A DNA stretch of 21,674 nucleotides from Caecitellus pseudoparvulus (lineage: Eukaryota; Protista; Bigyra: Bicosoecida): NCBI GenBank assembly GCA_965644315.1, contig CBFFRQ010000194.1, positions 1-21,674 on the forward strand, read 5' to 3'. Shown in pieces: positions 1 to 20,721 of the stretch (the stretch's first letter is position 1; each line of letters begins with the position of its first letter). A program made the position numbers and the translations under genes. The notes under the pieces were generated by a model, which was not told the origin of the DNA, did no database searches, and was given only the letters and a program-made list of their open reading frames with translations.

Positions 1-67
1 GGGGAATGACAGCTGATGCTGCGAGAGGCATGCCATGTGAAGCAAAGCAATGATGCACAATGCACCA

Positions 68-134
68 GGGGGGACTATAAATTCATAAATGAATTTATGA
101 GCGATATGCCTCAACTGCTAACGCAGTTTGCGGC
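68..134. repeat. Hairpin module copy 1 (GGGGGACTA-stem/TAAA loop-GAGC..TGCCTCA-stem/TAAC loop)
   Basis: ATAAATTCA-TAAA-TGAATTTAT (77-98) and AACTGC-TAAC-GCAGTT (113-128) are perfect inverted repeats; the module recurs at 632. Confidence 0.75.
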
Positions 135-211
135 TGGTTACGGATACGAGCTTAGATATATTTATAAATATTATTCTTAGATATATTTCTTAGATATATT
201 TCATAATATAG

Positions 212-599
212 ATAACACTTATTAGACACTTCTCCTATAAAAACAATCACTTATAAACCCTTGAGTATATTTTTTACTTACTTTTTACTACTATTTTATA
301 AGGGTTATCTAAGGGCTATCACTATATAAAAAAAAATAATAATAAAAAATATAAAATAAATATATATATATATCTGTTTCAGTCATTCTTAACACTCCTT
401 AACCCTTATAACACTTATTAGACACTATCCCTATAAAAACAATCATTTATAAACCCTTGAGTATATTTTTTACTTACTTTTTACTACTATTTTATAAGGG
501 TTATATAAGGGTTATCATTACAATAAATAGAAATAATATAAAAAATATAAAATAAATATATATATATATATATTTTCTGAGACTATTCTTAGCCCTTAT
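212..599. repeat. Tandem duplication of a ~196-bp AT-rich unit (212-407, 408-~599)
   Basis: Both copies begin ATAACACTTATTAGACACT and share TTATAAACCCTTGAGTATATTTTTTACTTACTTTTTACTACTATTTTATAAGGGTTAT followed by a (TA)n run. Confidence 0.9.
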
Positions 600-631
600 C
601 TGACAATCAGTCAAAACAAAATTGAAGCAAT

Positions 632-731
632 GGGGGACTACATACATAAATGTATGAGCTGCCGTGCCTCAGATTGCTATCGCAGAGAGAAGGAAGGAAG
701 GAGTCTTCCGCTTCGCTCTCCTTCCTTCCTT
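632..731. repeat. Hairpin module copy 2 plus a 14-bp perfect inverted repeat
   Basis: GGGGGACTA CATACA-TAAA-TGTATG AGC..TGCCTCA..TGC-TATC-GCA; AAGGAAGGAAGGAG (690-703) pairs with CTCCTTCCTTCCTT (718-731). Confidence 0.75.
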
Positions 732-1054
732 AATTTCTCATTCGTTGCACTCATTCTAAATATATGTTTTGTTACACAAAACATTCTGTTGGTTACCTTT
801 TATTATTATTATTATTTGGGTTACCTATCATATGAGAAATTAATATATATTTTTTTTAAAAGTCCCTAAAAAAAACGTAACCTTATATAAATTAATATAT
901 TATATATAAAAATTTTTTTTTAGGGTATTATAATACACTTACAGTATAACCTTCTAAAAGTATATATTTCGTTCATTCATTCGCTCATATAATCAAAAAA
1001 ACGATATTTTTTATAGAAGGGTATTTAAAAAACCCTATAATATATATTTATATA

Positions 1055-1161
1055 AATCAATCATTCATTAACCATATGAGAAATTCAATCAATCAATCAT
1101 TCATTAATCATATGAGAAATTAATCAAATTATTCAATCAATCATTCAATCAATCAATCAAT
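1055..1161. repeat. (AATC)n/(ATTC)n microsatellite-like tract with repeated CATATGAGAAATT
   Basis: Visible AATC/ATTC repeats; CATATGAGAAATT occurs near 829, 1073 and 1109. Confidence 0.7.
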
Positions 1162-1331
1162 AAAAAATAAAAAGGAAAAGCCAACGAAAATAAAATTTAA
1201 TTAATCAAACAATAAAAGGGAATTAATAATATTATGGTTATAACCTAACGCACCTTATGATAATACTTTATATATAAACCTTTTTTAAATCACTTAAAGA
1301 TTTGTTATTTTACATATATATATAATATAGT

Positions 1332-3035
1332 ATGGAAATATTCAAATTTACTGAATTTAAAAAATGTGTAGCAAATGATGAAGCTAAATGGAAAGCACAA
1401 AACTTTGATAACAAAAAGTTTAATGAAATTAAGAAAATTAAAAATTTTGAAGTTTGTGAATACTTAGAATCAAAAAATTACATTAAAAAAACTGTTTATT
1501 TAGTAAATGATGATTATATTACAGGTGGTGTAATTATCCCAAAAAAAATATTTGATGCAAAAATTCAAAGATTTCCTAAAATTCTTAAAGAATGGTTTAA
1601 GTTTGAGTATTGTAATTTTAAAACTCCAGTAATTAAAACTGATAGAGAAAAATTATTACCTGATGAATTTAATTTATTGCCTGAAGGATTACATAAATAT
1701 AAACCATTCAAAGATTTTGATAAAGAAATAAGAAAATATGCATTATATTATATAAACAATTATATACGATCTGTTTTATGCAATGATAAAGAAGAACATT
1801 TTCAATATATTATAAAATGGATTTCTTATATGATACAAGGCTATAGAAACGATGGTATGCTTGTTTTTAAAGGAATTGAAGGTTGTGGAAAATCAACATT
1901 TACAAAAATGATATGTGATTATATTTTAGGACGTAATAGAACACAAAAATCAGACTCAAAGCCATTAACTGGTGGTTATAATAGTGAATTAATGGGGAAA
2001 CAGTTGATATATTTTGAGGAATTGCGGTCAGGAACAAAAAGCGAACAAGAAATGGCAGCATCAACATTAAAAGATATGATTACAGCAGAAACACTGAATT
2101 ATGAAGAAAAATATAGAACAAGACTAAGTAATATTAAAAATGTTTCTAATTTTGTAAGTTTATCAAATAATTATTATGCTATTAAAGATAATCAAGGGCG
2201 ACGATACTTTATATTGGATATTAATACATCACATTATGATAATGAGGAGATGTGGGACATAATACATATGAAATGTATGAATAAAAAAATAGGACACGCT
2301 TTATATTGTTATTTTATGGAAGTAGATGTAAAAGGTTTTAGGTCTCAAAAAGATATGCCATTAACAGAAAATAAAATTGCATCTTTTGTTAAGTCCTATA
2401 CGCCTGAAATTATATTTATTAGAGATTATTATTTATTTACAAAAAAACCAATGAATATTAAAACAAACGATTTATATGCTGAGTTTTTAGACCATACCCC
2501 AGTTAATAATCCTTCAAAAAAATCATATTTTTATGATAAATTAAAACACTATGGATTCCAATACAGAAAATCAAATGGATATAATAAATATATTTATAGT
2601 CCTTTAGAACTTCAAGAACTAGCCGATAAATTTAAATGGGGTTTTATAGATGAAGCAGAAAATCACGAAAAAAAAGATGATTTAACAGAAAATGAAGAAG
2701 AATACACAAAAGAACAAGAATTAATAAATGACCAATCAAAAAGAATAAAAGAATTAAATAAAGAAGTGGAACAATTAAAACTACAAATAAAAAAATTAAC
2801 AGAAAAACCAATACCAGAATATGAACCAAAAATAGAAGAGCAAAAAGAAGAGCCAAAAAAAGAACCAAAAGAAGAGCAAATAAAAGAGCAAAAAGAAGAG
2901 CCAAAAGAAGAACCAAAAAAAGAACTAAAAGAAGAACCAAAAGAAGAGCCAAAAATTAAGCCCAAAAAGAATTTACAAGACGATTTTAATGATTATGCAT
3001 TTAACGATGAACCTGAAATCAAGTCCAAAGGTTAG
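1332..3035 (+). CDS. D5-like/superfamily-3 helicase (primase-helicase-type ATPase of viral/Polinton-like elements; DUF5906-like), possibly C-terminally truncated
   Basis: 567-aa intronless AT-rich ORF. Walker A GIEGCGKS (1872-1895), Walker B LIYFEE, LKDMIT..YEEKY motif, sensor FVSLSNN and arginine-finger-like GRRYFIL, then coiled-coil and K/E/P low-complexity tail. The stop codon is the TAG of the GGTTAG junction. Confidence 0.8.
   Translation: MEIFKFTEFKKCVANDEAKWKAQNFDNKKFNEIKKIKNFEVCEYLESKNYIKKTVYLVNDDYITGGVIIPKKIFDAKIQRFPKILKEWFKFEYCNFKTPVIKTDREKLLPDEFNLLPEGLHKYKPFKDFDKEIRKYALYYINNYIRSVLCNDKEEHFQYIIKWISYMIQGYRNDGMLVFKGIEGCGKSTFTKMICDYILGRNRTQKSDSKPLTGGYNSELMGKQLIYFEELRSGTKSEQEMAASTLKDMITAETLNYEEKYRTRLSNIKNVSNFVSLSNNYYAIKDNQGRRYFILDINTSHYDNEEMWDIIHMKCMNKKIGHALYCYFMEVDVKGFRSQKDMPLTENKIASFVKSYTPEIIFIRDYYLFTKKPMNIKTNDLYAEFLDHTPVNNPSKKSYFYDKLKHYGFQYRKSNGYNKYIYSPLELQELADKFKWGFIDEAENHEKKDDLTENEEEYTKEQELINDQSKRIKELNKEVEQLKLQIKKLTEKPIPEYEPKIEEQKEEPKKEPKEEQIKEQKEEPKEEPKKELKEEPKEEPKIKPKKNLQDDFNDYAFNDEPEIKSKG
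2820..2965 (+). repeat. Coding low-complexity KEEP/KEQ repeats in the helicase C-terminus
   Basis: Repeated AAAGAAGA(G/A)CCAAAA units encoding KEEPK. Confidence 0.8.
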
Positions 3036-6000
3036 ATCTCAATGCATTGCACTTCACCTCCACGCTTGCAACTTACGCGGTTCGGCTTGGGCGTCACATG
3101 CGGCGCTCGCTGCCGTGCACGAATGCACTGCAGAGGCGTCGCAGCGGCTTCCACTTGTGTGGATCTGCAACCAACACAGTCTTGCGACCGTTGTAGAGGT
3201 CGCCGCTTGCTAGGGCGTGTTCTACGCCCGCCCCGTGGGGAGAGAGTCCACTCCTTGGCCAGCTTGAACCACACCATAGAGAGTCCATCCAGGTGGCGCG
3301 CTCGACAATCAGCACTTCACAACATAATCCAAATCATTTCTCTGTGCTGTACCTCATGCTTGCTCGCTTCAACGTGCCTGCTGCCGCGGTGAACCCTTGC
3401 GGGGCAACTGCAGGCCGTTGTGAGGGAGGGGTGCTGCTGTGGCGTTTCGGTTGAAACGCCGCGGCGGCGGAGGGACCGCCTGGCGCACAAGCGCGCGCCG
3501 CAGCACCACATCCCCTTCGCAGGTTACTTTCCTCATATATAGGTTCATCATCTGTCGCACTTGGATGCTGAGTCCGGAGCCGGTGAGTCCGTGCCTGCGG
3601 CCCCGCGCGTGGTCCGTCCGTACGTCAAGCACGGCTTGTTCCACCCGCGTTGCCGCAGGGCTGCTTCAAGGACATCAAGAGGCTCCATCATCGTCAGGTA
3701 GGTGCCCGCGAACCCATGCTTCAGCAATTCCTCCTCCTTTCGCAGAGCTATTCGACGATCATCGGGGGGGCTTCAGCAGGCGCACTGCTTCGCAGGAGAG
3801 TGACCGTGGTTGTCACCACGCCATATGTAAGCCTGCTATTGCACGCCCGCGCCCTCCAGTGCCTCTTCTTCGCCCTCAGAGCCTTGTCCCATGGAGACTG
3901 ACTGTTTCCCTCGGACCAAGCCGTGGTCAAACAAGGTCGACTGCTGGGAGAAGGACCGGGGTGGCCCGCGCTGTGAGCGATCAGGGAAGTAAGTGCGCTG
4001 CGTCCTCCGCGTGCGTACATCCTGAGTCTGCCTGTTCACAGCACTTGACACAGGAACCGTATGGCCAGGAAAGGGACAGGCACGGCCGTGAGCTGCCCAC
4101 CAGAGGTACCTTGCGTGCCGCTGGATGTGCACATGCTCTGGCGAGGTAAGTCGAAGCATGCGCTGCAGCATGACGTCCCACGCAGATGAAGCGAAGGCAG
4201 CGCCTGCCTGAAGCAACTTCTTCCAGAGGACAGGGGGCTTGACTGGACCACGAGCGGAGCGAAGGAGGAGATGGGGGTGGCTCATGACCGCCGCCCCTTC
4301 GGGACCCCACAGCTGCTGCTCCGGGTCCTCGTCAATGCGGAAGGGCCACTGGCCACATAGGAGCAAGCGGAGGAGGAGTCTGGAGGACGACCGAGGGGAA
4401 GCAGACCGAGCCTTCGCCAACTGAAGGACACAGGTCAGGGGGGCAGGGATGGACAGATGAGCAGGGGGGCGGTCGCCATGTACGTAGCTGTTGGACTGGG
4501 CTGCGATGGACAGCATGGTGGTGAAGGCGTCTTGCCTGGCTTGGTCCAGAGCTGGGTGGCTGCACCAGAGCAGGACGTGCTCGTGCAGAGTGGCCCACGA
4601 GACACTCCCGCAGAGTGGGCACGCTTCAAAGAGCGTCGGGGTGTCTTCGCCGTGGATGAACTGAAGAGTTTGCCAAAGATGGACTTTCACAACTTGTGGC
4701 CGGTCATTATCGCAGACCCACAGTAGTGGACTTGGGGCTGACGGGATGGGGTGGAGCCAGCAGAAGAACCGGGCCCCCACGCCTACATGATACGGGCGTG
4801 GACGGCGCACGCGGTGTAGGTCACCGGTGGGGGAGTATCCGAGGGCAGGGCATTCAGATGACTGGGCGATGTGCAAGAAGGAGCACACAACGTGCTGCCG
4901 CGCACGCCACGACATCTTGGCAGGGAAGGCAGGAGGCGACAGCATGCTTGAGGAGGAGGAGGCAGCCAGACCAAGGTACTTGATCTTGGGAGGCGTGGGG
5001 TCCAGGTCCTGTGTGTCGGTTTCGCTGTCTTGGGAAGCAGCACCTGAGCTTCCATCCCCTTGGATGAGCCCCTCAAGGGCACTGCGGCTGGGCAGGCAGC
5101 CGTGCAACCACAAGTCCAGCAGGCCGTGAAGAGCGAAGGGAGGGGGGATTCCTGATCGAGCGCGGTCCAGGTCTCCGTTCAAGTTGACAAGGAACTCCAT
5201 CGTGACTGGGGAGGGGAGCATGTCGAGCGCAACCGGCAGGGTCTGCAGCATGACCCTCGCTACTGGTGTCCCGGCATGGAGATCGGAGATGAGCTTGCGG
5301 AAGATGTTCGAGCGAAGCTTGGTTGCGCGTATGTGTGCAGGAAGGAAGCCACATGCGGCGAGTTTTGCATAGTTGTGCATCCTTGCCAGGGAACTTTGCA
5401 TGCCGATCTGCGTCTTGCTCAGTGCAATGGCGAGACCCCGATCCACTTCACGCAGGGGAAGGACCGAGTTGCGGACCTGAGTAGCGAGTATGTAGTCCGC
5501 CGCAGCCGTGATTGAGGCACTGCCTATGCGCTGCTTGAGGTCAAGGCCTACCCATTCACCTGTAAGTAGAGCACCGCACGCAAATCCCGCTTGTGTACAG
5601 GAAAGGCCCGCCTGTTTGAGGGCAAGGGCCCGCGTTTTGCGGACATTCTCGCATAGTGGAGCGCCAAGGAAGACATAGCTGCGTGATCGCTGGATGTGGA
5701 CACCACCAACTGTAAGTGCCTTCCCAGACTTGAGCCACCTGGTCCGCCATACTGCCTTGCGCCTCTCGTTCGCGCATACCCCGTTGACTGGTGCTGCGTT
5801 AGTTACCACCATGATGCCGGACTTTCTTGGGTTGATCGTCAGGCCCACACGCGCCCCCACAGCCCGCACTTCATGAAACATTCTTTGCATCGCAGAAGGA
5901 GACGTGGCCAAGCAAGCAAGATCGTCGGCATACAGAGTGTGAGTGAGGCGGCCTGCAGATGTAGGCACCCCAGCTCCAGCGTATCCCTGTTTAGGGAGTT

Positions 6001-9000
6001 CTTGAAGGCGCTGGGACAGAACATCAATGGCGACTTTGAAGAGTAAGGGTGACAGGGCGCCACCCTGAGGGACGCCGCTTGTGACAGGGAGGGGATCGCA
6101 CAGTCCGTGGGCCGTGTGGATGGAGACACTGGCCCGTGACATGTACTCTGACACAGTCTTGAGCAGGGGCTGAGGCAGTCGGGCGGCTTCAAGGATCTCC
6201 AGAATGGCGGCATGACTAACAGAGTCAAATGCTGCCTTGAAGTCAACAAACATCACAAGGACATGCTTGTCTGGTGAGCGTCGAAGGTAGCTATTTGTGG
6301 CCTCCTGAAGAGCAATGATTTGCTCGTGTGTGTTGCGTGCCTTGCTGAACCCTGCCTGCTCTCGCGAGATCCAAGACTTCATCCATGCTTCCACGCAGGC
6401 CGCGACGACGGAGAAGAACAACTTGGCTGGAGGAGGCCGACAGACAATCAGCCTGTACGTATCCACACGCCCTGGCATACTCGTCTTCTTTGGGATGAGC
6501 GTGCCCACGCCCTCATGGTACTTCGCAGGGCATGATCCACCTTCAAGGACTTTCAACAGGGCTTGACTGTAGTTCTTCTTGAACTTTGCACTGGAGTACT
6601 TGAGGTGCTCAGCCTGGAACTGACCTCTTCCAGGATTGCGGTGCAGATTGAGAGCATTCATGGCTTTGATCACAGTGTGTTCAGTTGGGAGCCAGGTCGC
6701 TGGTGGCTGGAACTCTGCATGCATGGATGGTAGCAGTCTTCTCAGCCCATACTTGAGAGGCGTCAGGGGTGTGACAGTCGGACTGATGATCTTCCCCATT
6801 TGCTCGCGAACAGTGTGCTTGACGGCAGTGCCTGCATGCACAAGCTTCCCATCGCTCCCGTACACAGACTGCAGGGATGCTGTCCCTGCCTTTTTCCTTC
6901 GACCAGACAGCCGCCTGACATGCATGTGGGCAGCAAAGGGGTCAACGACCGCCAGCTCTTTGATGCGCTGCTTGATCTGAAGAACCGAGTGCTTGTGCTT
7001 CTTCTTGACCAGGTGAGTGCACCGTCGCATTGCCTCCTTCCTGATCTGCACTGTGTGGGAAAGGTCTTCCACCATCATTCCTTTCTGTTCTCCAAGAACG
7101 CGGGTCATGACAGGATCTGAAGATCTCGCAGTGTTGTGGACCAAGGCAAGGCGTCGGTCAATGCGGCACAACTCGCGTCGCAGCTTCTTGGCCCGAGCTG
7201 TCATCTTCTTCTTCAGTTTACTGTACTTGGACACGTCAGTGAACACTTGAAGTACTTGAGGAGATGTTCCCTTGCAGGTAGCATGTGCCTTCTGGGCTGC
7301 TGCAGCAATAAGTTGATCCAACTTCGACAAGGCCTGTCCCTCTCCAGTGCTTGCAGGTGGTATGAGTGTGGTGGCCTGGGCATGGTCGAGGAGGCTTCGG
7401 TGGAGCGCTTGAGCTCTCTGTCCCGACAGTGTCGAGGACGGCCACCACGGCGGGACAGAGTGGGGTCGTTTCGGACAATGGGCGACCTTGGCCTTCTTCA
7501 CAAGCTTCAGGGCCACAGTTGAGGACAGCAGGAAGTGATCGCTGAAAATCAGGGCTGCCTTTTGCTGACGTCCAGCACTGGAGAAGGTGGTCGTTATCTT
7601 CAAGGGGCGTGTCATGGTTGTCTTCAGCAGTGGGCACAAAAGAATGTGGTCAAGTGCTCTGTTGTATGTCGCATGGGTCGGCACACCTGCCTTGCCTGGG
7701 GGTGAGAGTCCGCCCATTTGGCAGAGCCTGTCAAGTTCTTGGACATCATCAGTAGGATCAGGGATACCAGTCTCATTCACCCATGCCTCTTTCCCCCAGC
7801 ACTGCACACCACTGTCACCCGGGTGACAGTTCAGATCCCCCATAAGCACCATCATGTGCGTGTGTTGCAGGGACTCTACGGCCGCGTGCAGTTGCTCCCA
7901 GACTTCCTGCCTGTGGGGGAGCTTTGTGTCAGGGTCGGCCAGTGGCTTCTTGCGTTGTGCCGTGTGCCAGTTTGGTACGTATGCAGCAATGATGGCAAGT
8001 GGTTTGGGCTTGGCTGGGACTGAACATGCAACGATACAGCGGCCGTCGAGTCCCAGGTCGAGCAGTTGTGTGGCTCCAAGGCGTTTGTCCAGAAGAAGAG
8101 CCACCTCACTTCTCCCTGGTGGTCTGTCAGGGGGGTTGGGCCTAAAGCACTGGAGGCCTACCACCTCAGTGTCGAGGGTCCCATGCCCTCCGGGTTCTGT
8201 CAGGCAAAGTGCAAGCAAGGCAGTGTGGGCTTGGGGTGTTCGTGCACAGTGTATGACCTGGTGAAGGTGGGTTCCACAGGATCGTGCGACGTTCCAGGAG
8301 ACGAAAGCCACCTTGGTCAGGCCCTTTCGACCAACAGGGGTATGTGGACCCTGGTCCCACCGAGCAGACATTGAGTCCCAACTCTGTGGGATGAACTTCA
8401 TGAGTGGGTCATTGTCCTTGGCTTTCTCCAGCATGGAGGCACTGTGTCGTGTACGTCGTGCCTCTGGAAGGACAACCCGGGTTGCCTTTCCCGCGATGAG
8501 TGTACGCGCATGTGCAGTGCTGTCATTCACCACAAGCGGCAGGGGGGGGTACTCGTCTCGGATGGTCTTGAACGCATCACGCAGTCGATCGCGGAAGGAC
8601 CGTGTGTGACCTGAGAGTGGAGTGACCGCTACTCTGTACACAGTGGTTACCCCTTCCGTATGTAGCCGGATCAGACACTTGTGTAAGGGAAGTTCTGAGG
8701 TAGAGCTTGGCAAATCTGGGTTCCACATGTGAAGCACACCATGGTCATGGTCAATGAGGAGTAGTTGAAGGTGAGCACTATGCGCCTTGGATGGAATGGT
8801 CAAGGCAAAGGCAAAGTACACATCCTCAAAGTAGTCCTCCTGCCGTTCGTCCTCCATCACAGCTCGGACATCAAGCTGACTGCTCGGTAGGAGGTCTGCG
8901 CCCTTCAGCGCCTTGTGACCGTTGTTGATGTGCTGCATGAGCAGGTGTAAGCCGGGAAGGAGGACAGGCGGGGATGCAGCTGACAGCAGGGAGTCTTCAG

Positions 9001-9853
9001 GTGCAAAGCGCACCAGGAGTTTGCGAAAGGCCGTCAGATCATCCGGTGCCGCATCCACCTCCCCGCTCCCAGTTCTGGTGACGGGGACGACATCGGAGTC
9101 AGGTGTTTGTGGGGCTGCCATGCCTGCAGAGGCCTTGATGTTGCCCATCGCATGTTGGGCTGCAGCAATGGTTGCTGCGTGATGAAGAAGAGCGAGGTCA
9201 TCTTGCTGTAAGATTGGTTCACCGGCGGCAGTCTCAAGACAGGCCTGTACGCAGTGTCTGTCCTCAGTGTTACTGTACACATGGTCAGAGGACAGGAGGT
9301 CACACAGCTTTGTATGGTGCTTGATAGACCGTTTCGGTAGGCATGCCGGCACTCGAGGACACGCAGCAAGTTCAACCACTTTGGTTGGGGGCTGGGCAGG
9401 AGCTGCAGCTGCTTTCGGTTCAGGCCCAGTTGTTGTGGGGGGTGCCTTCGGGCTTGGGAAGAGCTGGTCCCATCGCGTGGCTGTGCCCTTGCTGACTCGA
9501 GACGTTGGAAGGGCCACGTCGGCCTTGGTGCGTGGTGGGGTGGTACATGCAGGCGGGTTCGGCTTGGGGGAACCTCTGCCTTCCTCAGACGGAGCAGGCT
9601 CGCTCTTGAACAGGTCAGCAAAGGTGCGGTGGCGCTTTGGTTCCTTCTTTCCTTTTCGCAGGCCTCGCCGCACCTTCTTCTGCCTTCTGCCATCCTTCAG
9701 TGCTTGGGTGGGAGGCTGGGCCTCCTTGGCTGTACTTTCACCGACAGGGGCATCTCCCTCAGAGGGGACGGAATGTCCGGTGGCATTGTACATGGTCTTT
9801 GGCTGGGATCGTTGTGCAGCCAGGGAAGTCTTGACAAGGTTCACCACTGATGC
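3036..9853 (-). mobile_element. Element A: telomere-associated APE-type non-LTR retrotransposon, 5'-truncated
   Basis: Bounded by GGTTAG (3030-3035) and a TTAGGG tract from 9854. Contains an APE-RT-CCHC ORF. Its 3' ~200 nt are homologous to B and C; it lacks the ~780 5' nt present in B and C. Confidence 0.93.
3836..9847 (-). CDS. Non-LTR retrotransposon polyprotein (basic/disordered linker, putative Cys-protease-like domain, APE endonuclease, reverse transcriptase, CCHC knuckle, unknown C-terminal domain); N-terminus missing
   Basis: APE ~7510-8314: SWNV, LTE, EVALLL, AYVP, GDLN, LDHI, SDH. RT ~5660-6650: LIPKK, YRLI, QAGF, VDFKAAFDSV, GVPQGGALSPLLF, YADD, INPRKS, YVFLG. Knuckle CPLC..H..C at 4562-4621. 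2003 uninterrupted codons. Confidence 0.95.
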   Translation of the reverse strand: MVNLVKTSLAAQRSQPKTMYNATGHSVPSEGDAPVGESTAKEAQPPTQALKDGRRQKKVRRGLRKGKKEPKRHRTFADLFKSEPAPSEEGRGSPKPNPPACTTPPRTKADVALPTSRVSKGTATRWDQLFPSPKAPPTTTGPEPKAAAAPAQPPTKVVELAACPRVPACLPKRSIKHHTKLCDLLSSDHVYSNTEDRHCVQACLETAAGEPILQQDDLALLHHAATIAAAQHAMGNIKASAGMAAPQTPDSDVVPVTRTGSGEVDAAPDDLTAFRKLLVRFAPEDSLLSAASPPVLLPGLHLLMQHINNGHKALKGADLLPSSQLDVRAVMEDERQEDYFEDVYFAFALTIPSKAHSAHLQLLLIDHDHGVLHMWNPDLPSSTSELPLHKCLIRLHTEGVTTVYRVAVTPLSGHTRSFRDRLRDAFKTIRDEYPPLPLVVNDSTAHARTLIAGKATRVVLPEARRTRHSASMLEKAKDNDPLMKFIPQSWDSMSARWDQGPHTPVGRKGLTKVAFVSWNVARSCGTHLHQVIHCARTPQAHTALLALCLTEPGGHGTLDTEVVGLQCFRPNPPDRPPGRSEVALLLDKRLGATQLLDLGLDGRCIVACSVPAKPKPLAIIAAYVPNWHTAQRKKPLADPDTKLPHRQEVWEQLHAAVESLQHTHMMVLMGDLNCHPGDSGVQCWGKEAWVNETGIPDPTDDVQELDRLCQMGGLSPPGKAGVPTHATYNRALDHILLCPLLKTTMTRPLKITTTFSSAGRQQKAALIFSDHFLLSSTVALKLVKKAKVAHCPKRPHSVPPWWPSSTLSGQRAQALHRSLLDHAQATTLIPPASTGEGQALSKLDQLIAAAAQKAHATCKGTSPQVLQVFTDVSKYSKLKKKMTARAKKLRRELCRIDRRLALVHNTARSSDPVMTRVLGEQKGMMVEDLSHTVQIRKEAMRRCTHLVKKKHKHSVLQIKQRIKELAVVDPFAAHMHVRRLSGRRKKAGTASLQSVYGSDGKLVHAGTAVKHTVREQMGKIISPTVTPLTPLKYGLRRLLPSMHAEFQPPATWLPTEHTVIKAMNALNLHRNPGRGQFQAEHLKYSSAKFKKNYSQALLKVLEGGSCPAKYHEGVGTLIPKKTSMPGRVDTYRLIVCRPPPAKLFFSVVAACVEAWMKSWISREQAGFSKARNTHEQIIALQEATNSYLRRSPDKHVLVMFVDFKAAFDSVSHAAILEILEAARLPQPLLKTVSEYMSRASVSIHTAHGLCDPLPVTSGVPQGGALSPLLFKVAIDVLSQRLQELPKQGYAGAGVPTSAGRLTHTLYADDLACLATSPSAMQRMFHEVRAVGARVGLTINPRKSGIMVVTNAAPVNGVCANERRKAVWRTRWLKSGKALTVGGVHIQRSRSYVFLGAPLCENVRKTRALALKQAGLSCTQAGFACGALLTGEWVGLDLKQRIGSASITAAADYILATQVRNSVLPLREVDRGLAIALSKTQIGMQSSLARMHNYAKLAACGFLPAHIRATKLRSNIFRKLISDLHAGTPVARVMLQTLPVALDMLPSPVTMEFLVNLNGDLDRARSGIPPPFALHGLLDLWLHGCLPSRSALEGLIQGDGSSGAASQDSETDTQDLDPTPPKIKYLGLAASSSSSMLSPPAFPAKMSWRARQHVVCSFLHIAQSSECPALGYSPTGDLHRVRRPRPYHVGVGARFFCWLHPIPSAPSPLLWVCDNDRPQVVKVHLWQTLQFIHGEDTPTLFEACPLCGSVSWATLHEHVLLWCSHPALDQARQDAFTTMLSIAAQSNSYVHGDRPPAHLSIPAPLTCVLQLAKARSASPRSSSRLLLRLLLCGQWPFRIDEDPEQQLWGPEGAAVMSHPHLLLRSARGPVKPPVLWKKLLQAGAAFASSAWDVMLQRMLRLTSPEHVHIQRHARYLWWAAHGRACPFPGHTVPVSSAVNRQTQDVRTRRTQRTYFPDRSQRGPPRSFSQQSTLFDHGLVRGKQSVSMGQGSEGEEEALEGAGVQ

Positions 9854-10163
9854 TTAGGGTTAGGGTTAGGGTTAGGTTAGGGTTAGGGTTAGGGGTTAGG
9901 GTTAGGGTTAGGGTTAGGGTTAGGGTTAGGGTTAGGGTTAGGGTTAGGGTTAGGGTTAGGGTTAGGGTTAGGGTTAGGGTTAGGGTTAGGGTTAGGGTTA
10001 GGGTTAGGGTTAGGGTTAGGGTTAGGGTTAGGGTTAGGGTTAGGGTTAGGGTTAGGGTTAGGGTTAGGGTTAGGGTTAGGGTTAGGGTTAGGGTTAGGGT
10101 TAGGGTTAGGGTTAGGGTTAGGGTTAGGGTTAGGGTTAGGGTTAGGGTTAGGGTTAGGGTTAG
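9854..10163 (+). repeat. Interstitial telomeric tract (TTAGGG)n, 310 bp, ending GGTTAG
   Basis: Direct reading; two variant units (TTAGG, TTAGGGG) near the proximal end. Confidence 0.99.
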
Positions 10164-13086
10164 CTACTCAATGCATTGCAGATTGCCTCCATGCAGGCTA
10201 CATCATGGTACAGCTTGGGCTTGGACATGTGGTGCCACCTGCGCCACAACAGAATGCAGTGACACAGACACCACGACGGCACCGCTTGCACGGCTTTGCG
10301 ACTAGCACAGACTCGTGTCCGTTGTATAAGTCGCCGTCTGTCTTGGCGCTTCAGCGCCCGCCCCGGTGGGATGGTCTTGAGGTGTAGGTCCAGGTCTCGG
10401 TCCACTCTTGTCTTGTCCGTCCAGTCCAGTCTCGTCCGTCTCGGTCCGATGTCCAGGGGTGGAGACCCGACTTGCTTGGCTTGGGTGGCGGTGTGGGCTG
10501 GAGGATATGGACTCGACACGGACTGGGTGTTGCTGAGATGCAAGCACACGACCCAGCCCGGCTGTCCCTTCGGCTCAGGTTTGGGGGCGGCCTCACAGAT
10601 CTTGCTGCAAGTGCCTTCCCCTTCCACTGAGCCGAGTCCTGATGTGTTGGTATCGATGTTGGGTTGGTGATGGTGAGGTTGGGTTGGACTTTCCAATGTC
10701 CGATGTCAGCTATGTGCGTCGGTCGCGACACAAAGCTTCAGTCATGTGTGGCACAGGGAGTATGCCCCCACAGGTGACTTACATCAGGCGTCCACCCATC
10801 TGCCCGATCGAGATGTGGGGCACATCCTTGACCTTGGGCAGGCGACCCTCGCCGTCTTCAGGCACCAGCCGCTTGAGGGGGTCCTTGACCTCAGCCTCCA
10901 GGGTGGCGGCCTGCTGTCGGGTCATCCGCCCATGAGGCATGGCCACCCTTGTGCCCTTGCCAGCGATGAGGGTCTGGGGGTGCACGGTGCCGTCGGTGGC
11001 CTTGTGAGGCAGGGGGGGGAAGTCATCTCGGAGAGACTGGAGTGCCCCTCGAAGCCTGTCCCGGAAGGGTGCTGGACTGCCCGCCTCGGGTGTGGTCCAG
11101 ATCCGGTACAAGACGTTGATGCCTTCGGCTGCCAGCCGGGTCATGCACTTGTGCAGGGGCAGCTCGTCATGGAGGTCAGGGATGTCGGGGTTCCACAGCA
11201 CCAGCTTGCCTCGATCATGGTCGACGAGGATGAGCTGCAGATGGGCCGTGTTGTCGGTCCACACCTCTCGAAGTGCGAAGGCATACAGCACTCCGTCGAG
11301 GTGCCCCTCTTGGTCACCCTCTTCATCAACCTGGCTGGGGTCGACGCCGGCCTGGCCAAGGTCATCATGCCCGGCTGGGGCACGGTACCCTTGGTTGATG
11401 CGGTCGATGAGCAGGTGCAGGCCGGGAAGCAGGACTGGTGGTGTACCTGGGGCCAGGAAGGTGTCATCCGGCGAGTGCTGGTGCAGCATGTTGCGGAAGA
11501 CGGCCACCCGTTGCCCGTCTGAGCGGAAGGGGGAGGGTGGCTTCTGGCCGACGTCCATGATGTCCGAGCTGGACGAGTCACTGACCACCCCCTCCAGCTG
11601 CCTGACCATGTGCTTGAAGGCAAGCTGGGCAGCGTTGATGGTGGCTGCATGCTGGAGTAGGAGGAGGTCCCCAGCCTCGAAGACCCTCTCCCCTGCTGCC
11701 GTCTCGAGACAGGCCTGGACACAGGCCCGCCCCCCACGTTAGAGTACACGTGGGTCGATGACAGCAGGTCGGCCAGAGGGCCAGGCTTGATGGGGTACTC
11801 GGCCAGGTGCTCGGGTGTCCGCACACTGTCATGAAGAGGCACCACCCTTGTGATCACCTCCCATGCTGCTGCTGCAGACGGCCGATACCGGTGCACCTCG
11901 GGGCTTGCCTCGCCCGACGGGGTGGGGGACGGCCACTTGCGGTCGACGCCCCGCTGCACCCTTGATGAAGGCAACATGGCATGCACCACAGGGGTGGTGA
12001 CGGTATCTTTGGGTGAGCCTTGGGTGGCAGGTGGTGAGGTTGGTCGAGGTGCAGGTGGCCGGACGTTCTTGATGAAGACGTCCTCGAAGGTGAGGGATCG
12101 TCCGGCTGACTTGCCCTTTCCTCGCTTGCCTCGACGGGTCTTCTTCTTCTTCGGTGCCTTGTCGAGCTGAGTGTCAGTCCAGGTCGATGGTGTCTTGGTG
12201 TCGACAGGTGCATCACCCTCGGAGGGGACGGATTGTCTGACACTGGGACGGACGGCTTGGGCTGGCACGGGGCCATGGTCGAAGTGGGACCTAACGAGGC
12301 ACATGACCTTGGCAACATCACCTGACTGGCAGGCGATTTCGGTTGCTTCCTTGGTCACTTGGTGGGCCACTTGGATGGCGGTGGGGTGGGCCTTCACCTT
12401 CACTTTCGCCTTCGCCGATGCGAACTGCTTGGTGTTGGTGTAGGCCACGGCGACGAACCCACCTTGGCCGACTCGAATGGCGAAGTCGTCCTCTTGAGCA
12501 GCAAGAATGCGAAGTTGACGTGCCACTGTTGGTGAATCACCCTCACTTCCGAGCGTGACGAGGATGGTTGGCGATCCGGTGGGTCCCTGGCGCAGGGCCG
12601 CATTGGCGTTGCCGAATTCCGCACTCAGCCCTGGGATCAGCCGTTCGGCGGCTTCCCCATAGACCTCGAGCCACATGTCCCGTGCCGAAGATGAACTATC
12701 ATGATCAGTCTTGGGCAGGGGTCCTCCAAGCTCGAAGGTGCGTGCGGCACCCCGACGTGGCATGTCAGTGAAGACACCTGTTCTGGGGCCGAGCACTTGC
12801 TTGCGCTTCAGGCACCCCTCCACGAAGAGGACCCCCAGGACTTGATCCACTTGGGCGTTCATGATGCTTGTCAATGATGCTTTTGATGTCGATCCCAGGT
12901 GCATGCCCCGACCGAGGGCGCAAACTGGGAGCCACGGTGCGATGGTGTGCGGAATTCGCACTACCCCGCCCCGGTGCGCACCACCCAACCAGCAAGCACT
13001 GTGCAACACCACACTTGGGTGCACGAGCGCCTGGATTAGGCAATGTTAGCACTTCACAACTTGTGATTAGCTTGACATTTGGAAAG
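10164..13086 (-). mobile_element. Element B: non-autonomous relative (2.9 kb) with both termini but no APE/RT
   Basis: Flanked by telomeric repeats; 5' 88 nt are 83/88 identical to C; 3' ~200 nt homologous to A and C; ORF homologous only to the pre-APE part of A and C. Confidence 0.9.
10779..12862 (-). CDS. N-terminal-only protein of element B (~694 aa once one homopolymer frameshift at 11730-11735 is corrected): N-terminal domain, basic motif and putative Cys-protease-like domain
   Basis: Joins ORF-track entries 11141..13024 and 10779..11609. One extra G in the G6 run gives NVGGRACVQACLE, matching A's NTEDRHCVQACLE. The start Met is inferred from MNAQVDQVLGVLF (B) versus MSSKASQVLGVLF (C). 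Confidence 0.75.
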
Positions 13087-13114
13087 TTAGGGTTAGGGTT
13101 AGGGTTAGGGTTAG
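13087..13114 (+). repeat. Short telomeric spacer (TTAGGG)4TTAG
   Basis: Direct reading between the 5' end of B and the 3' end of C. Confidence 0.98.
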
Positions 13115-16100
13115 CAACTCACAATGCATTTCACCTCGGCACAGCTTGGCACCGTACAGCTTGAGCGTCACACGGGCGCCCCACAATGCACCTCTGCACA
13201 TGTAGGACGCCACAGCGGCTACCGCTTGGCGCGGATTCGCAACAAACACAGGCTTGCACCCGTTATATCTGCCGCCACTTGCTAGGGCAGGTCCCTGCCC
13301 GCTCCAATTCATCATCTTGGCCCTCCTCCGCTACACTTCATCCCTTGCTCCGCCAGCGCCAGACACCTGGGGCACACCAGAGCACACCCAGGCATCCGCG
13401 CAGTCTTGACAACAGATCATAATCCAAATTCCTCACCCACCTCCTCTGTGGCCCTCATAGGCCTCTCTGCGCCCTTCATGAGGTGTGTGCTCCGCCTCTG
13501 CGCGGGAACTCGGCCGGGTGCGTGGTGCGGAATTCGATCGCGCACACCAGCACCCGTGCGCACACACGCGCCCGCGCCACAGAGCGCATCGCGCGCATCA
13601 AGGGGGATACAGAAAGGAAAAGGACCTTCTTCTTCAACCCGTCACGCCCTGGTTTCGTGGTGAGTGAGCTTGCTTCATCGTCAGCCGCCATCCGGGCCGC
13701 GGCCGTGCAGCACTGCGGCTGCACACGCGCCGCGGCCCGAGGCACGCTCCCGCTCACTCCACTGCTACTCGCAGGCTATGTAGTAAGTAAAAGGTAAGGT
13801 CTTGGGCATCTGCTTCGGGCTACCGTGGTTATCACCACGCTTCACACAGGTTCATCACGTCAGGACACTCGTGGAGGGTAGACGCGGCCACAAGCGTGGC
13901 TGTTCCACTCCCCGCCCGCACGCCTGCGTTCCGCCTTACTCCTCGCTCTCTTCACAGGAACCATCGGGCCCTTCCCCCTCACCATCAGTGTCTGCATGGG
14001 CTGGCTGAGGCCCCATGAAGTGCTGCAGCGTCCTCTGGACCTTGCCCTCCGTGGACGGCACTTGGCCAGCCTTGGCAGGGAAAAGGTGCGTGCCCTGCGG
14101 CGAGTGCGGGGCCTGCGCGTGTGCCGCGTGGCCGCTGACCGCACTGGCTGCGTGCGGCCAGGCAGCGGCGCCCCGCGCCCATGTACTGCCCACCACAGGT
14201 ACTCAGCATGCCTCTGGACAGCAAGGTGGTGGGCATCGGTCATACGCAACATGTAAGTGACTGTGACCCGCCACGCCTTTGCTGTGAACTCAACCGCGCT
14301 GCGCAGGATGTCTTGCCATACAGCTGGGGCACGGACACGGCAAGGACCAGCACGGTGGACGAGGTGGGGGTGGGAGAGGACAGCCGCCTCTTTCATAGAG
14401 ACAAGCTGCTCTTCGTCGGCCAGCCCCCACCGGTGAGGCCACTGCCCGCAGAGCAGGAGCCTGTGGAGGACCTCGAGGTCCCGCAGGCTTCGCGGCTCTG
14501 GGTCGGGGGCACGAAGGAGGGCGTGGCAGATCTTGGGGGGATGGGCAGGCACTGCACTTGGCCCGCCGCGGACTCGGGCACAGCTGACCTGTTGGCCAGT
14601 TCTCTGAACTTGGTCATCGTGTGTTGGCGTGCCATGGTGAGTTCGTGGTGGGTGCAGTGCAGCAGGATGTGCACGTGCAGCTGTACATCGGTGTTGAGTC
14701 CGCAAATCGGACAGCACTCGTACAGAGTGGCACTGTCCCCCCCATGAAGAAGCTGTAAGGTCTGGAAGTGATGGACCATCACTCTGGTGGGCCTGTCATC
14801 AGGACAGACCCAGAAGAGGGGTTCACCCTGTGTGGCAGTGGATGTAGCCACACGAAGTGCTGCGCACCAGGCCCAAGATGATACGGCCTGGGCTTCTGCA
14901 CTTGGGGGATTCGGCTGTCGGTGGTGTAGTGGGCAGCTGCACTCGGCACTGCCTGGGCTACATGAAGATACGACGCGAGGACTTGGCGACGCAGGGCCCA
15001 GGGGGTGTCTGCCGTGAAGGCCGGGGGTTCGGCCATGGACGACGTCTCGCTGGCAGCCACCCCAACCACCGCAGACCTGTGGAGGCCCGGGGTGGTCTCA
15101 AGTCCGGCAAGGACTTGGGCAAGGGCTGTGGCAGCATGCTCAGAGCCAGGTGCACATGCAAGCCGAAGCTGTGCAAGGTCTGGCATGCAGCCCATGAGCC
15201 AGAGGTCCAAGAGGGCATGCAGTGCCCACGGAGCAGGGACACTGGCAGCCCGGAGTCGACCTCCATCAGCAATGGTGTCGACGATGAAGGTCGTCGACAT
15301 CGAAGCAGGCATAAGGTCAAGGGCCTGCGGGATGGTCAGGCACAGAGCTCGGGCAAGAGGGGTGTCCGAGTGCAGCATCCGGAGAGCCTTGACAAACATC
15401 CCAGTCCGCAGTTGCGTGGAGCGGATGTGGGCAGGCAGGACTCCGCATAGAGCCAGCTTGGCGTAGCTGTGGGGGCGCATGAGTGCACTCTGCGAGCCGA
15501 CTTGGGTCCTGTCCAAGGCGAGGGCGACGCCGCGGTCAACATCGCGCAGCGGAAGCAGGGAACTGTTGGCTTGGGTGGACAGCATGTAGTCGGCGGCTGA
15601 CGTGACAGTGGCATACCCAACCAGGTGCCGCTGCTGCACATCGAGCCAGGTGGCACTGAGCAGCGCGCCCGCAGTGAACTCCGGCTTGGATGCAAGCAAG
15701 CCCAGCTTGCTGCAGGGTGAGTGCACGGGTCTTGGCAGGATGTTCGGACATCGGCACACCCAAGTAGGTGTACTCGGCCACCCGTTGGATGGACTTGGTG
15801 CCAACCTTCAGCATGCTGCCCGCTTTGAGGGCAGCCGAGCGCCACACCAGCTTCTTCCTTTCACTGACTGGTGTCCGGCTGCCTCGCACGGAGTTGGCAA
15901 GGATCATGACCCCGGACTTCGACGGGTTGATGGCAAGGCCAACCCGGGGCAGCGATGGCCTTCACCTCTACGAAGATTCGGTGCAAGGCCGTGGCAGACG
16001 TTGCGATGCAGGCCAGGTCGTCTGCATACAGGGTGTGGGTGACATGGCCTGCTGGTGTTGGGATGCCCACTCCCTGGATGCCTTGGAGGGGCATCTCGTG

Positions 16101-19100: not shown

Positions 19101-20720
19101 CGATTGAAAGAGGTCAAGCTTGTCTTGCTCGGTGGTCGGCATGGAAGGTTCTGTTTCACAGACAGCATGGACCTCCGAGTCTGGTGCCAGGGTGACGCGC
19201 GCTGCTCTTCTTCAACACAGCACAGAAGGATGTCTGCGCCGCTTGGATGGTGGCTGCGTGTTGAAGAAGGACAAGGTCATCGTCATTGAAGAGTGGCTCT
19301 CCTGCTGCTGTTTCAAAAAGCAGGCCTGGACACAGTGTCGTTGGTCCTTATTGCGGAACGCGTGCGCAGAGGCGAGGAGTTGCTGCAAGGGGGAACCCAA
19401 GTCAAGGTTTGCCTGTCCAAGCCGTGCTGGTCGGCGACTGCAGTCAGCAAGTTTTAGCAGCGTAGTGGGTGCCGTGTTTGCAGGACTTGCAAGAGGTGGC
19501 TGTGCCCCGCTGCCCGATAGTGCCGCAGCTGTCGGGGACACGGGAGGAGGTCTCTGCGTGGGCTGGGCGAGTCCCATCTGCTGAAGGTCGGGCGCTTGAC
19601 TCTGGTGGACGGAAGAGGGACATGTTCAGGGGAAGGAGCAGCTTGGCCTGACGACTCGGCGGGTGCAGATGGAGGGGAGGGCGCTGTGGGGCGAGTAGTC
19701 ACGACGCCCTCCTTGAACAGTTCAGCAAAGCGCCGAGGAGGAGAGCTCTTTGTCGATGGCTTGCGTTTGCCCCTCCGTGTCTTCTTCTTCTTGGGACCGC
19801 CTTCAGCAAGGGGCTTTGGCAGTGTGCTTGGCAGCTTGTCGACAGAGCGTCATCTTCTGGAGAGACGGAGGTCCGGACAGGCTTTGGAGCACGCTTGGCG
19901 ATGGAGTGAGTGCTGGTGACATGGGCATGGACAAGCTTCAAGATCTTGGACACATCCCCACTCTCACAGGCAATGTTGGTTGCTGCCTCAGAGATCTTTT
20001 GAGCAACCTTCACTACAGAGGGAGGGGCGATCACGCTGACCCTGGCGCGCTCTGACGTGAACTGCCGCGTGTTGGAGTACACCACGCCCACAGAGCCGCC
20101 CCTTCAACATGATGATGAAGTCTTCTCGCACAGCAGCAGCAACGCGCAGGGACTTGGCAATGGCGGGGCCTTCACCGTCACTCGGCAGCGTGACAAGGAG
20201 AATGGTCTGCCCTGGTGCGGATTGTTTCAGCGCGGAATTAGCGCGCACCATCACAGGAGCAGCTCCAGGAAACTCGGCCTCCAGCTCATCTCCGAAGATG
20301 CCAAGCCACTTGCGGACGAAAAATGATGCATCTTGGCCATCCGTGCAGTCAATGTCCATGCCACCGAGCTGGAAAGTCCGGGCTGCCCTCGGCGTGACAT
20401 GTCAGTCAGCACGCCTGTTCGTGGCCGCCCTGACACACGCTGCTCCAGGCACTTGTCCGCGAAGAGCACGCCGAGGACTTGGCTGGCCTTGGATGACATG
20501 ATGATGAAGCAATGGCCTCGGGCAAGCAGTGGTGCAGCGTCCAGCCGGAGCCGCACTTAGCACTGCGTGGGGAGCGTGGCGTGCGGAAATCGCACTGCTG
20601 CTCACCCGCGCACCCAATGCAATGCACTAGCGCTGTGCAACACCACACTTGGGTGCACGAGCGCCTGGATTAGGCATTGTTAGCAATGCACAACTTATGA
20701 TTAGGTTGACATTTGGAAAG
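13115..20720 (-). mobile_element. Element C: full-length (7.6 kb) telomere-associated APE-type non-LTR retrotransposon, divergent paralog of A
   Basis: Telomeric repeats on both sides; conserved 5' and 3' termini; colinear protein homology with A over A's whole length. Confidence 0.93.
13936..20499 (-). pseudogene. Frameshifted polyprotein ORF of element C (APE, RT, CCHC); true pseudogene or sequencing-indel artefact
   Basis: About 16 ORF-track fragments carry AWNV, VTEP, GDLN, LDHI, SDH, LIPKK, QAGF, GVPQGGALS, YADD, YTYLG and CPIC..H..C in order, separated by single-base shifts. Confidence 0.85.
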
Positions 20721-20721
20721 T

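What the first reader, a model, noticed from the sequence alone, without database searches (positions are those of the whole stretch)
3021..3060. Helicase gene joined directly to the retroelement at a lone GGTTAG: candidate chromosome-healing junction
AT-rich coding sequence runs to AAGTCCAAA-GGTTAG and element A begins at the next base. The ORF stop is the TAG of this telomeric hexamer, there is no AT-rich 3' UTR, and no continuation of the AT-rich block appears beyond A. Internal target-primed insertion would leave the rest of the target on the far side. Inference: a break or cut was primed at a minimal telomere seed, extended by the element and then capped with repeats, or the distal part was lost later.
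Basis: partly seen in the sequence, partly recalled or inferred. Interest (0 to 1): 0.8.

Follow-up and report, generated by a model that had tools for sequence, protein, structure and literature searches.

The report
Virophage gene capped by telomeric retrotransposon
A helicase gene of a virus-like element resident in this protist genome has lost its last ~40 codons, and the cut end carries one telomere unit and then a stack of telomere-specific jumping genes and TTAGGG repeats, which is what a healed chromosome end looks like; no sequencing reads could be checked.

Summary
Composition jumps from 25% to 60% GC at 3035/3036. The helicase ORF (1332-3035) stops in the TAG of GGTTAG (3030-3035). 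The exact 3' terminus of a minus-strand APE+RT LINE starts at 3036.

The reading as a healed end is largely supported.
- A paralogue in the same genome aligns up to base 3029, then reads CCCAAG and runs on for 40 more codons. The hexamer is therefore not native and the gene is truncated.
- The joint is unique in the assembly.
- No AT-rich DNA follows. There is only LINE A (5'-truncated), 52 TTAGGG, element B, 5 TTAGGG, element C and a 159-repeat terminal tract.

Two corrections apply. The "helicase gene" belongs to an endogenous virophage/Polinton-like element, not to the host. The lone GGTTAG is not special: of 47 distinct LINE 3' joints, 14 carry exactly one GGTTAG or GGGTTAG, some after abortive LINE stubs of 44-200 nt. 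The unit is probably copied from the LINE RNA's own 3' end rather than laid down by telomerase.

At least two other virophage-like copies are cut elsewhere and capped. Earlier notes of this scan describe similar healed ends in this genome.

The parts
1..64 (.). GC-richer flank at the contig start, left of the AT-rich block; origin unknown
   Evidence: Matches to the AT-rich terminus in other loci begin at window 65-69. Only a weak match elsewhere, C99 at 86%. No hit in the LINE sequences of the window or in any fetched locus.
65..631 (+). Terminal module of a virophage-like element: G-run, A/T hairpin and 196-bp tandem repeat
   Evidence: TRF period 196. The 224-bp part (407-631) recurs as inverted pairs about 22 kb apart on C212 and C19. 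The same terminus is seen in L055, L057, L056, L058 and L053.
632..1331 (+). Second G-run/hairpin terminus and TIR-like leader of the helicase-bearing element
   Evidence: 818-859 and 1213-1300 match both ends, in inverted orientation, of the 18.5-kb element at C66:550.2-568.8 kb. Hairpin copy at 632-684.
1332..3029 (+). Native part of the viral-type helicase gene (DUF5906/VapE-like P-loop), 3'-truncated by about 40 codons
   Evidence: Pfam PF19263 at 3.8e-16 and PF05272 at 2.4e-10. 75% aa identity to C19/C149 copies. DNA homology to the C66 paralogue ends exactly at 3029.
3030..3035 (+). Single telomeric unit GGTTAG at the joint; it supplies Gly and the TAG stop
   Evidence: The same unit and phase precede nearly all LINE 3' ends in the genome.
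3036..9853 (-). LINE A: APE+RT non-LTR retrotransposon with 3' end at 3036; 5'-truncated, open frame runs to its end
   Evidence: ORF 9847-3836, 2003 aa, RVT_1 at 1.1e-30 and Exo_endo_phos at 6.4e-8. It lacks the first 156 codons present in P0032, 89% identical. No poly(A)/T run at the 3' end.
9854..10163 (+). (TTAGGG) x 52 laid on the 5' end of LINE A
   Evidence: TRF, 51.7 copies, 98% matches; sequence.
10164..13085 (-). Element B, short partner element with the same type of 3' terminus
   Evidence: Joint ...GGGTTAG then CTACTCAATGC. Its 5' end ...TTTGGAAAG equals that of C.
13086..13114 (+). (TTAGGG) x 5
13115..20721 (-). Element C, full-length-sized (7.6 kb) copy with a broken reading frame
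   Evidence: Joint ...GGGTTAG then CAACTCACAATGC. ORFs are fragmented. 5' end at 20721.
20722..21674 (+). Terminal (TTAGGG) x 159 running to the contig end, G strand 5'->3' outwards
   Evidence: The window is the whole contig C194.

Best explanation
The AT-rich block is the left end of an endogenous virophage/Polinton-like element. Its DNA became a free chromosome end, by breakage or terminal erosion, inside the 3' part of the helicase gene, leaving a plus-strand 3' end ...AAGTCCAAA. That end was used directly as primer by a telomere-specific LINE (element A). Reverse transcription started at the very 3' end of the LINE RNA, which carries one C-strand telomere unit (CUAACC) instead of poly(A). 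This wrote GGTTAG and then the element onto the plus strand. Synthesis stopped before the RNA's 5' end, and telomerase then added about 52 TTAGGG. Elements B and C and the present telomere were added later in the same outward direction. Shown: the truncation, the non-native hexamer, the exact element terminus, the uniqueness of the joint, the polarity and 5' truncation of A, and the family-wide one-unit joint. Inferred: the free end as primer, the RNA origin of the unit, and the order of events.
For: - Paralogue homology stops at 3029, and the paralogue runs on for 40 codons.
- Among 12 helicase homologues in the genome, all others but one are complete (open frames 575-590 aa); that one, on C31, is cut at about codon 243 and capped by a 212-nt TTAGGG tract.
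- A third virophage-like copy (C129) is cut before the gene and capped by three units plus a B-type element.
- All LINE 3' ends point to the centromere side and are joined in the phase ...TTAG.
- Of 47 distinct joints, 14 have exactly GGTTAG or GGGTTAG and 17 have 7 nt or less. Several follow LINE stubs of only 44-200 nt, the picture expected from end priming or template jumping.
- A lacks 156 N-terminal codons and is followed at once by TTAGGG.
- No copy of A above 97% identity exists elsewhere, so the array was not recently copied from another end.
- An independent metagenome contig shows a full-length copy between TTAGGG tracts with the same joints.
- The LINEs lie almost only within about 30 kb of contig ends.
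Against:
- The element keeps an APE-type endonuclease domain with a GDLN-type motif, so nicking of a telomere tract cannot be excluded.
- One round of telomerase would also give GGTTAG or GGGTTAG ending in TTAG, so the unit's origin is not settled. I put about 60:40 for RNA-borne.
- The paralogue used to define the breakpoint is only about 29% identical overall and is similar just in this tail.
- The true parent element is not in the assembly.
Confidence: 0.62

Rival explanations
1. Telomerase healed the break first, laying a TTAGGG tract directly on ...AAGTCCAAA. LINE A was inserted later into that tract by its own endonuclease, just after the first unit. The 52 repeats beyond A are then the rest of the original cap.
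For: Telomerase-only capping of a cut helicase exists in this genome (C31: 212-nt tract). The LINE keeps an Exo_endo_phos domain. The constant TTAG phase could reflect a cleavage site.
Against: Insertion exactly after unit 1 of a tract of more than 50 units is improbable for one case. It does not explain why one unit is the modal joint (14 of 47), including joints after 44-200-nt LINE stubs. The best-studied endonuclease-targeted telomeric LINE, SART1Bm, needs at least three repeats (PMC7265360, abstract).
Confidence: 0.15
2. The joint arose by DNA recombination, not retrotransposition. Either a broken end in the helicase gene invaded or was end-joined to another subtelomere (break-induced replication or NHEJ), or an internal deletion fused the gene to a pre-existing GGTTAG-LINE joint.
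For: Subtelomeres here share many related arrays, and several contigs carry identical duplicated stretches.
Against: No donor exists: the best other copy of A's 3' end is 96-97% identical and has a different upstream tract. Microhomology at the joint is at most 1 nt against the paralogue. The breakpoint falls exactly at the start of a single unit, which is the family's usual retrotransposition signature.
Confidence: 0.08
3. The joint is an assembly artefact: a chimeric read or contig joins an AT-rich viral contig end to an unrelated subtelomeric array.
For: The contig is short and starts inside repeated DNA. Many contigs of this assembly break in the AT-rich elements. No reads could be examined.
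Against: A misjoin would not fall precisely at the element's first base with an in-phase telomere unit. There is no shared repeat between the two sides to mislead an assembler. The same architecture occurs at independent loci with other breakpoints.
Confidence: 0.07
4. The free end was never a chromosome break. A linear virophage-like DNA was captured at an uncapped chromosome end, its distal part was eroded, and it was then capped by the LINE.
For: At three other ends the G-run/hairpin terminus of such elements sits directly on an abortive LINE 3' stub of 190-440 bp (L057, L056, L053).
Against: The related C66 element encodes an rve integrase with chromodomain, which would equally explain insertion into subtelomeric arrays. 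The window's own left flank (1-64) is not recognisably LINE.
Confidence: 0.08

Closest known systems
Drosophila HeT-A/TART/TAHRE terminal retrotransposition, including healing of broken chromosome ends by HeT-A (review PMC5537684, seen as abstract; healing of terminal deficiencies from my own knowledge)
   Same: Head-to-tail arrays with 3' ends towards the centromere. Elements attach to 5'-truncated predecessors or to non-telomeric broken ends. A free 3' OH serves as primer.
   Different: Here telomerase repeats coexist and alternate with the elements. The elements end in a telomere unit instead of oligo(A). The autonomous element keeps an APE domain. The host appears to be a GC-rich protist, so the system probably arose independently.
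Bombyx SART1/TRAS1 (R1-clade LINEs targeted to TTAGG repeats by a sequence-specific APE; PMC7265360)
   Same: APE+RT LINEs embedded in telomerase-type repeats in one orientation and one fixed phase.
   Different: SART1Bm needs at least 3 repeats and a long poly(A) (PMC7265360 abstract). Here a third of joints have one unit, none has poly(A), and joints onto non-telomeric DNA are common.
Chlorella Zepp, and endonuclease-independent L1 insertion at dysfunctional telomeres or breaks (my own knowledge; Zepp is only named in papers listed)
   Same: LINE-type elements accumulate at, or repair, chromosome ends in telomerase-positive organisms.
   Different: Zepp and L1 end in poly(A). No sequence relation was found: the best named relatives of this RT are 30% identical or less.
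Endonuclease-deficient Penelope-like elements (Athena and others), whose 3' ends carry short reverse-complement telomeric repeats (my own knowledge)
   Same: The RNA 3' end carries telomere-complementary units that can pair with or extend a G-strand end.
   Different: These are a different retroelement class: Penelope RT without APE. Here it is a LINE with RVT_1 and an Exo_endo_phos domain.
Endogenous mavirus-like elements (EMALEs) of Cafeteria burkhardae (PMC8547959)
   Same: Low-GC islands of about 20 kb with TIRs in a high-GC protist genome, encoding a primase/helicase, rve integrase and packaging ATPase. Many copies are partial and lie at contig borders.
   Different: Identity of the organism was not established, and coordinates of the elements do not match the four published assemblies. 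That paper's main text never mentions telomeres, so truncation by telomere or LINE addition is not described there.

Membership tests
Healed chromosome end (de novo telomere formation on non-telomeric DNA) | Unique non-telomeric sequence is interrupted relative to intact homologues | tested here: met
   Homology to the C66 paralogue ends at 3029, and the paralogue continues for 40 codons plus downstream genes. The other homologues are complete.
Healed chromosome end (de novo telomere formation on non-telomeric DNA) | Telomeric sequence in G-strand-outward orientation starts at the breakpoint, and no distal part of the interrupted sequence follows | tested here: met
   GGTTAG at 3030, then LINEs and TTAGGG tracts up to the contig end. 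GC is 0.50 or more throughout.
Healed chromosome end (de novo telomere formation on non-telomeric DNA) | The joint exists in the DNA of the organism (spanning reads, PCR, terminal position by Bal31) | not testable with these tools
The exact joint was not found in JGI metagenome contigs.
Telomere-specific non-LTR retrotransposon adding to chromosome ends (HeT-A/TART-like mode) | RT-encoding non-LTR element in head-to-tail arrays, one orientation, confined to chromosome ends | tested here: met
   RVT_1 and Exo_endo_phos. Three same-sense elements lie in the window. More than 40 copies lie nearly all within about 30 kb of contig ends.
Telomere-specific non-LTR retrotransposon adding to chromosome ends (HeT-A/TART-like mode) | Direct attachment of the element's 3' end to 5'-truncated predecessors or non-telomeric ends | tested here: met
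   Seventeen of 47 joints have 7 nt or less of telomere-like sequence. Upstream flanks include LINE stubs of 44-200 nt, host-like DNA and AT-rich viral DNA.
Telomere-specific non-LTR retrotransposon adding to chromosome ends (HeT-A/TART-like mode) | Observed transposition onto a free end | not testable with these tools
   This needs experiments or population data.
SART/TRAS-type endonuclease-targeted telomeric-repeat LINE | Insertion inside arrays of several repeats, with repeats on both sides | tested here: not met
   The window joint and 13 others have a single unit upstream. SART1Bm needs at least 3 repeats (PMC7265360).
SART/TRAS-type endonuclease-targeted telomeric-repeat LINE | Poly(A) tail at the 3' joint | tested here: not met
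   There is no A/T run at any of the joints read.
SART/TRAS-type endonuclease-targeted telomeric-repeat LINE | APE domain with sequence-specific cleavage of the telomere repeat | tested here: inconclusive
   The domain is present (6.4e-8) and a GDLN-type motif is visible. There is no significant match to solved LINE endonucleases, and specificity cannot be tested here.
Endogenous virophage / Polinton-like element (EMALE-like) | Low-GC island of about 18-22 kb with terminal inverted repeats in host DNA | tested here: met
   C66:550.2-568.8 kb has inverted matches at both ends. Pairs 21.6-22.6 kb apart lie on C212 and C19. GC is 0.2-0.3 against 0.6-0.7 for the host.
Endogenous virophage / Polinton-like element (EMALE-like) | Replication/integration and morphogenesis genes: helicase-primase, rve integrase, FtsK/A32 ATPase, capsid proteins, protease | tested here: inconclusive
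   Helicase, rve plus chromodomain (rve 22.2 bits, below Pfam's 32.6 cut-off), A32-like ATPase and a weak, sub-threshold lipase-like match were found on the C66 element. Capsid, penton and protease were not detected by Pfam, and the window copy keeps only the helicase.

The most novel reading that the evidence does not exclude
In a telomerase-positive protist, a telomere-specific LINE carries its own telomere unit at the RNA 3' end. It can therefore seed a new telomere on any free DNA end without prior telomerase action. Endogenous virophage DNA at chromosome ends is then repeatedly cut back and re-capped this way, or linear virophage DNA is even captured at uncapped ends. The window joint would be a natural record of retrotransposon-first de novo telomere formation.
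Probability: 0.35. Interest if true: 0.7.

Novelty: new variant of a known kind. Interest (0 to 1): 0.5.

Why it matters
Healing of broken ends by retrotransposons is textbook for Drosophila, which has lost telomerase. Here the same kind of joint is seen where telomerase repeats and LINEs alternate.

The joint onto non-telomeric viral DNA, with only six telomeric bases, bears on mechanism. It argues for priming on a free end, with a telomere unit brought by the element. It argues against endonuclease targeting of repeat arrays.

It also shows one fate of endogenous virophage-like elements, namely terminal truncation and capping, that the EMALE literature I could read does not describe.

For annotation, the 567-aa 'complete' helicase ORF is a truncated gene whose stop codon is borrowed from a telomere unit.

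Tried and rejected
Loci were not delivered for the same reason.
- Exact joint (36 nt) in JGI metagenome contigs: no match. This is uninformative.
- Naming the organism:
  - Helicase relatives are unnamed metagenome proteins at 54% identity or less.
  - The LINE has one 88% relative from an ENA metagenome, and the rest are 30% or less.
  - A 1277-aa host-side ORF found nothing.
  - EMALE coordinates of the four Cafeteria burkhardae assemblies do not match this assembly's elements, so I do not name the organism.
- APE domain against solved structures: no significant match. The first attempt was out of frame.
- 'Natural stop' reading (the gene simply ends here): rejected. There is no 3' region or TIR, the paralogue continues, and GGTTAG is absent elsewhere in the AT-rich block.
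- MAFFT alignments of the tails were misled by the EEPK/lysine-rich repeats. A local alignment gave the clean breakpoint.
- Window 1-64 as LINE-derived flank: no support.
Full report
**What is there.** The window is the whole 21,674-bp contig C194 of a 30.6-Mb, 215-contig assembly.
- Composition changes abruptly at the finding. GC is 0.19-0.29 up to base 3000 and 0.50-0.67 from 3001 to the end.
- Read directly, the plus strand runs ...AAGTCCAAA (to 3029), GGTTAG (3030-3035), then ATCTCAATGCATTGC... from 3036.
- ORF 1332-3035 (567 aa) ends in the TAG of that hexamer.
- It is a viral-type P-loop helicase: DUF5906 at 3.8e-16 and VapE-like at 2.4e-10.
- From 3036 a minus-strand ORF of 2003 aa (9847-3836) carries RVT_1 (1.1e-30) and an Exo_endo_phos domain (6.4e-8). 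Base 3036 is therefore the 3' end of a LINE.
- Beyond it lie 52 TTAGGG (9854-10163), a 2.9-kb partner element, 5 TTAGGG, a 7.6-kb element and a terminal tract of about 159 TTAGGG reaching the contig end.

**Is the gene really cut, and is GGTTAG foreign?** The genome holds 12 helicase homologues.
- The closest (C19 and C149, 75% aa identity) are 573 aa and are followed by further viral ORFs.
- A more distant copy on C66 shares the tail motif QDDFNDYAF.DEP at DNA level.
- A local alignment runs from window 2951 to exactly 3029. After that the window reads GGTTAG plus LINE, while the paralogue reads CCCAAG... and continues for 40 codons to its stop.
- GGTTAG and CTAACC occur nowhere else in 1-3029.
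- The hexamer is therefore not native. The ORF's stop codon is borrowed, and about 40 codons plus the rest of the element are missing.
- No AT-rich DNA reappears distally.

**What the AT-rich block is.** It is not a host gene.
- Window 818-859 and 1213-1300 match both ends, inverted, of an 18.5-kb, 25%-GC island on C66.
- That island encodes the helicase, an rve integrase with chromodomain (rve 22.2 bits, below Pfam's cut-off), an A32-like packaging ATPase and a weak, sub-threshold lipase-like match.
- Other islands of about 22 kb with inverted terminal modules lie on C212, C19 and C68.
- This is an endogenous virophage/Polinton-like element family. It is very like the EMALEs described in Cafeteria burkhardae (PMC8547959).
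- I could not establish the organism. The published element coordinates do not match this assembly, and protein searches returned only unnamed metagenome sequences.

**Is the joint a fixed unit?** No.
- The helicase/LINE joint occurs once in the assembly.
- The nearest copy of A's 3' end (C184, 96-97%) has a 36-nt telomere-like tract and a different upstream sequence.

**How typical is a lone GGTTAG?** I tabulated 47 distinct LINE 3' joints from the loci in hand.
- All but a few end ...TTAG immediately before 2-9 subfamily-specific bases and the conserved AATGCATT motif.
- Tract lengths are 3-4 nt in 3 joints, 6 nt in 5, 7 nt in 9, 9-25 nt in 20 and longer in 10.
- Exactly one GGTTAG or GGGTTAG is therefore the modal joint.
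- Among the 6-9-nt joints, several follow abortive LINE fragments that keep only the first 44-200 nt of a 3' end.
- This is what repeated priming on a free end, or template jumping, produces.
- It is hard to reconcile with endonuclease insertion into repeat arrays. SART1Bm, the studied analogue, needs at least three repeats and a poly(A) tail (PMC7265360), and no joint here has poly(A).
- I therefore think the unit is copied from the LINE RNA's own 3' end, inherited by read-through of the flanking unit.
- One round of telomerase would give the same six or seven bases. I put about 60:40 for the RNA-borne origin.

**Polarity and order.**
- With the LINE sense strand on the minus strand, first-strand cDNA is the plus strand, growing outward from a primer ending at 3029 or 3035.
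- A lacks the first 156 codons of a full-length relative (P0032, 89% identity) and is followed at once by TTAGGG. This is expected if reverse transcription stopped early and telomerase then extended the end.
- B and C repeat the cycle.
- An independent metagenome contig (ENA ERZ23495255) carries a full-length copy between TTAGGG tracts with the same 3' and 5' joints. The family's telomeric habit is therefore not peculiar to this assembly.

**Parallel cases.**
- On C31 a related helicase is cut at about codon 243 and capped by a 212-nt TTAGGG tract, then a LINE.
- On C129 the same kind of element is cut before the gene and capped by three units and a B-type element.
- Another repeated sequence is cut at two different points and capped by the same LINE subfamily (L046 and L025).
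- Earlier notes of this scan on other pieces of this genome report similar healed ends. I treated them as leads. I examined the C31 case myself, though I cannot verify that it is the locus of note s1-661293.

**Rivals.**
- Telomerase first, then endonuclease insertion after unit 1: possible, but it does not explain the modal one-unit joint.
- Recombination or break-induced replication from another end: no donor above 97% identity and no microhomology.
- Assembly chimera: unlikely given base-exact, in-phase junction architecture and no shared repeat.
- Capture of linear viral DNA at an uncapped end: suggested by three loci where a virophage-like terminus sits directly on a LINE stub.

**Verdict.**
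- This is most likely a real terminal truncation of an endogenous virophage-like element, healed by a telomere-specific LINE.
- It is a telomerase-positive variant of the Drosophila HeT-A type of healing.
- Its value lies in showing that the LINE can attach to non-telomeric DNA with only one telomere unit.
- It is one instance of a genome-wide phenomenon, not a singular event.
- Read-level confirmation is still needed.

Noticed in passing
L057:1100-1500 (C129), L056:1700-2300 reverse strand (C198), L053:1000-1450 (C89): The G-run/hairpin terminus of AT-rich virophage-like elements sits directly on abortive LINE 3' stubs of 190-440 bp at three chromosome ends. This is either integration into the LINE arrays or capture of linear viral DNA at uncapped ends.
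   Followed up: partly
L055:200-2000 reverse strand (C31:9428-11227): A related helicase gene is cut at about codon 243, just after the Walker-type region, and capped directly by a 212-nt TTAGGG tract followed by another LINE subfamily.
   Followed up: yes
L046 and L025 (C138 about 10.9 kb; C114 about 31.9 kb): The same upstream repeated sequence (...GATTTACTCTGTT...) is cut at two different points and joined to the same LINE subfamily. One joint has a single GGGTTAG; the other comes after a further 300-bp AT-rich palindromic stretch and has 15 nt of repeats.
   Followed up: partly
L060:1-7707 (ENA ERZ23495255 scaffold_8088): An independent metagenome contig holds a full-length LINE of this family (2159-aa ORF, about 88-89% identical to element A's protein) flanked by TTAGGG on both sides with identical joint phases.
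   Followed up: yes
window 2830-2971: Imperfect 12/24/36/48-nt tandem repeats encode an E/K/P-rich expansion in the helicase tail. It is absent from the paralogues and keeps the truncated ORF at a 'normal' length of 567 aa.
   Followed up: partly
window 2951-3029 versus L011:9288-9369: The helicase tail resembles the C66 copy at DNA level, although the body of the protein is closest to C19/C149 (75%) and only about 29% identical to C66. This suggests mosaic recombination among the viral elements.
   Followed up: no
window 58-135 and 632-700: Two different G-run plus A/T-hairpin termini are stacked in the same orientation, type 1 then type 2. On C89 (L053) the order is reversed. This could be nested or tandem element ends.
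   Followed up: partly
window 21060-21125: A patch of degenerate repeats (GGTGAGG, TATAGGG, GAGAGGG and others) lies inside the otherwise perfect terminal TTAGGG tract. It is either a sequencing-error cluster or an old variant-repeat island.
   Followed up: no
G000 C19/C149, C19/C212, C68/C212: Pairs of helicase copies with identical scores lie on different contigs. They may be haplotigs or recent segmental duplications of whole viral elements.
   Followed up: no
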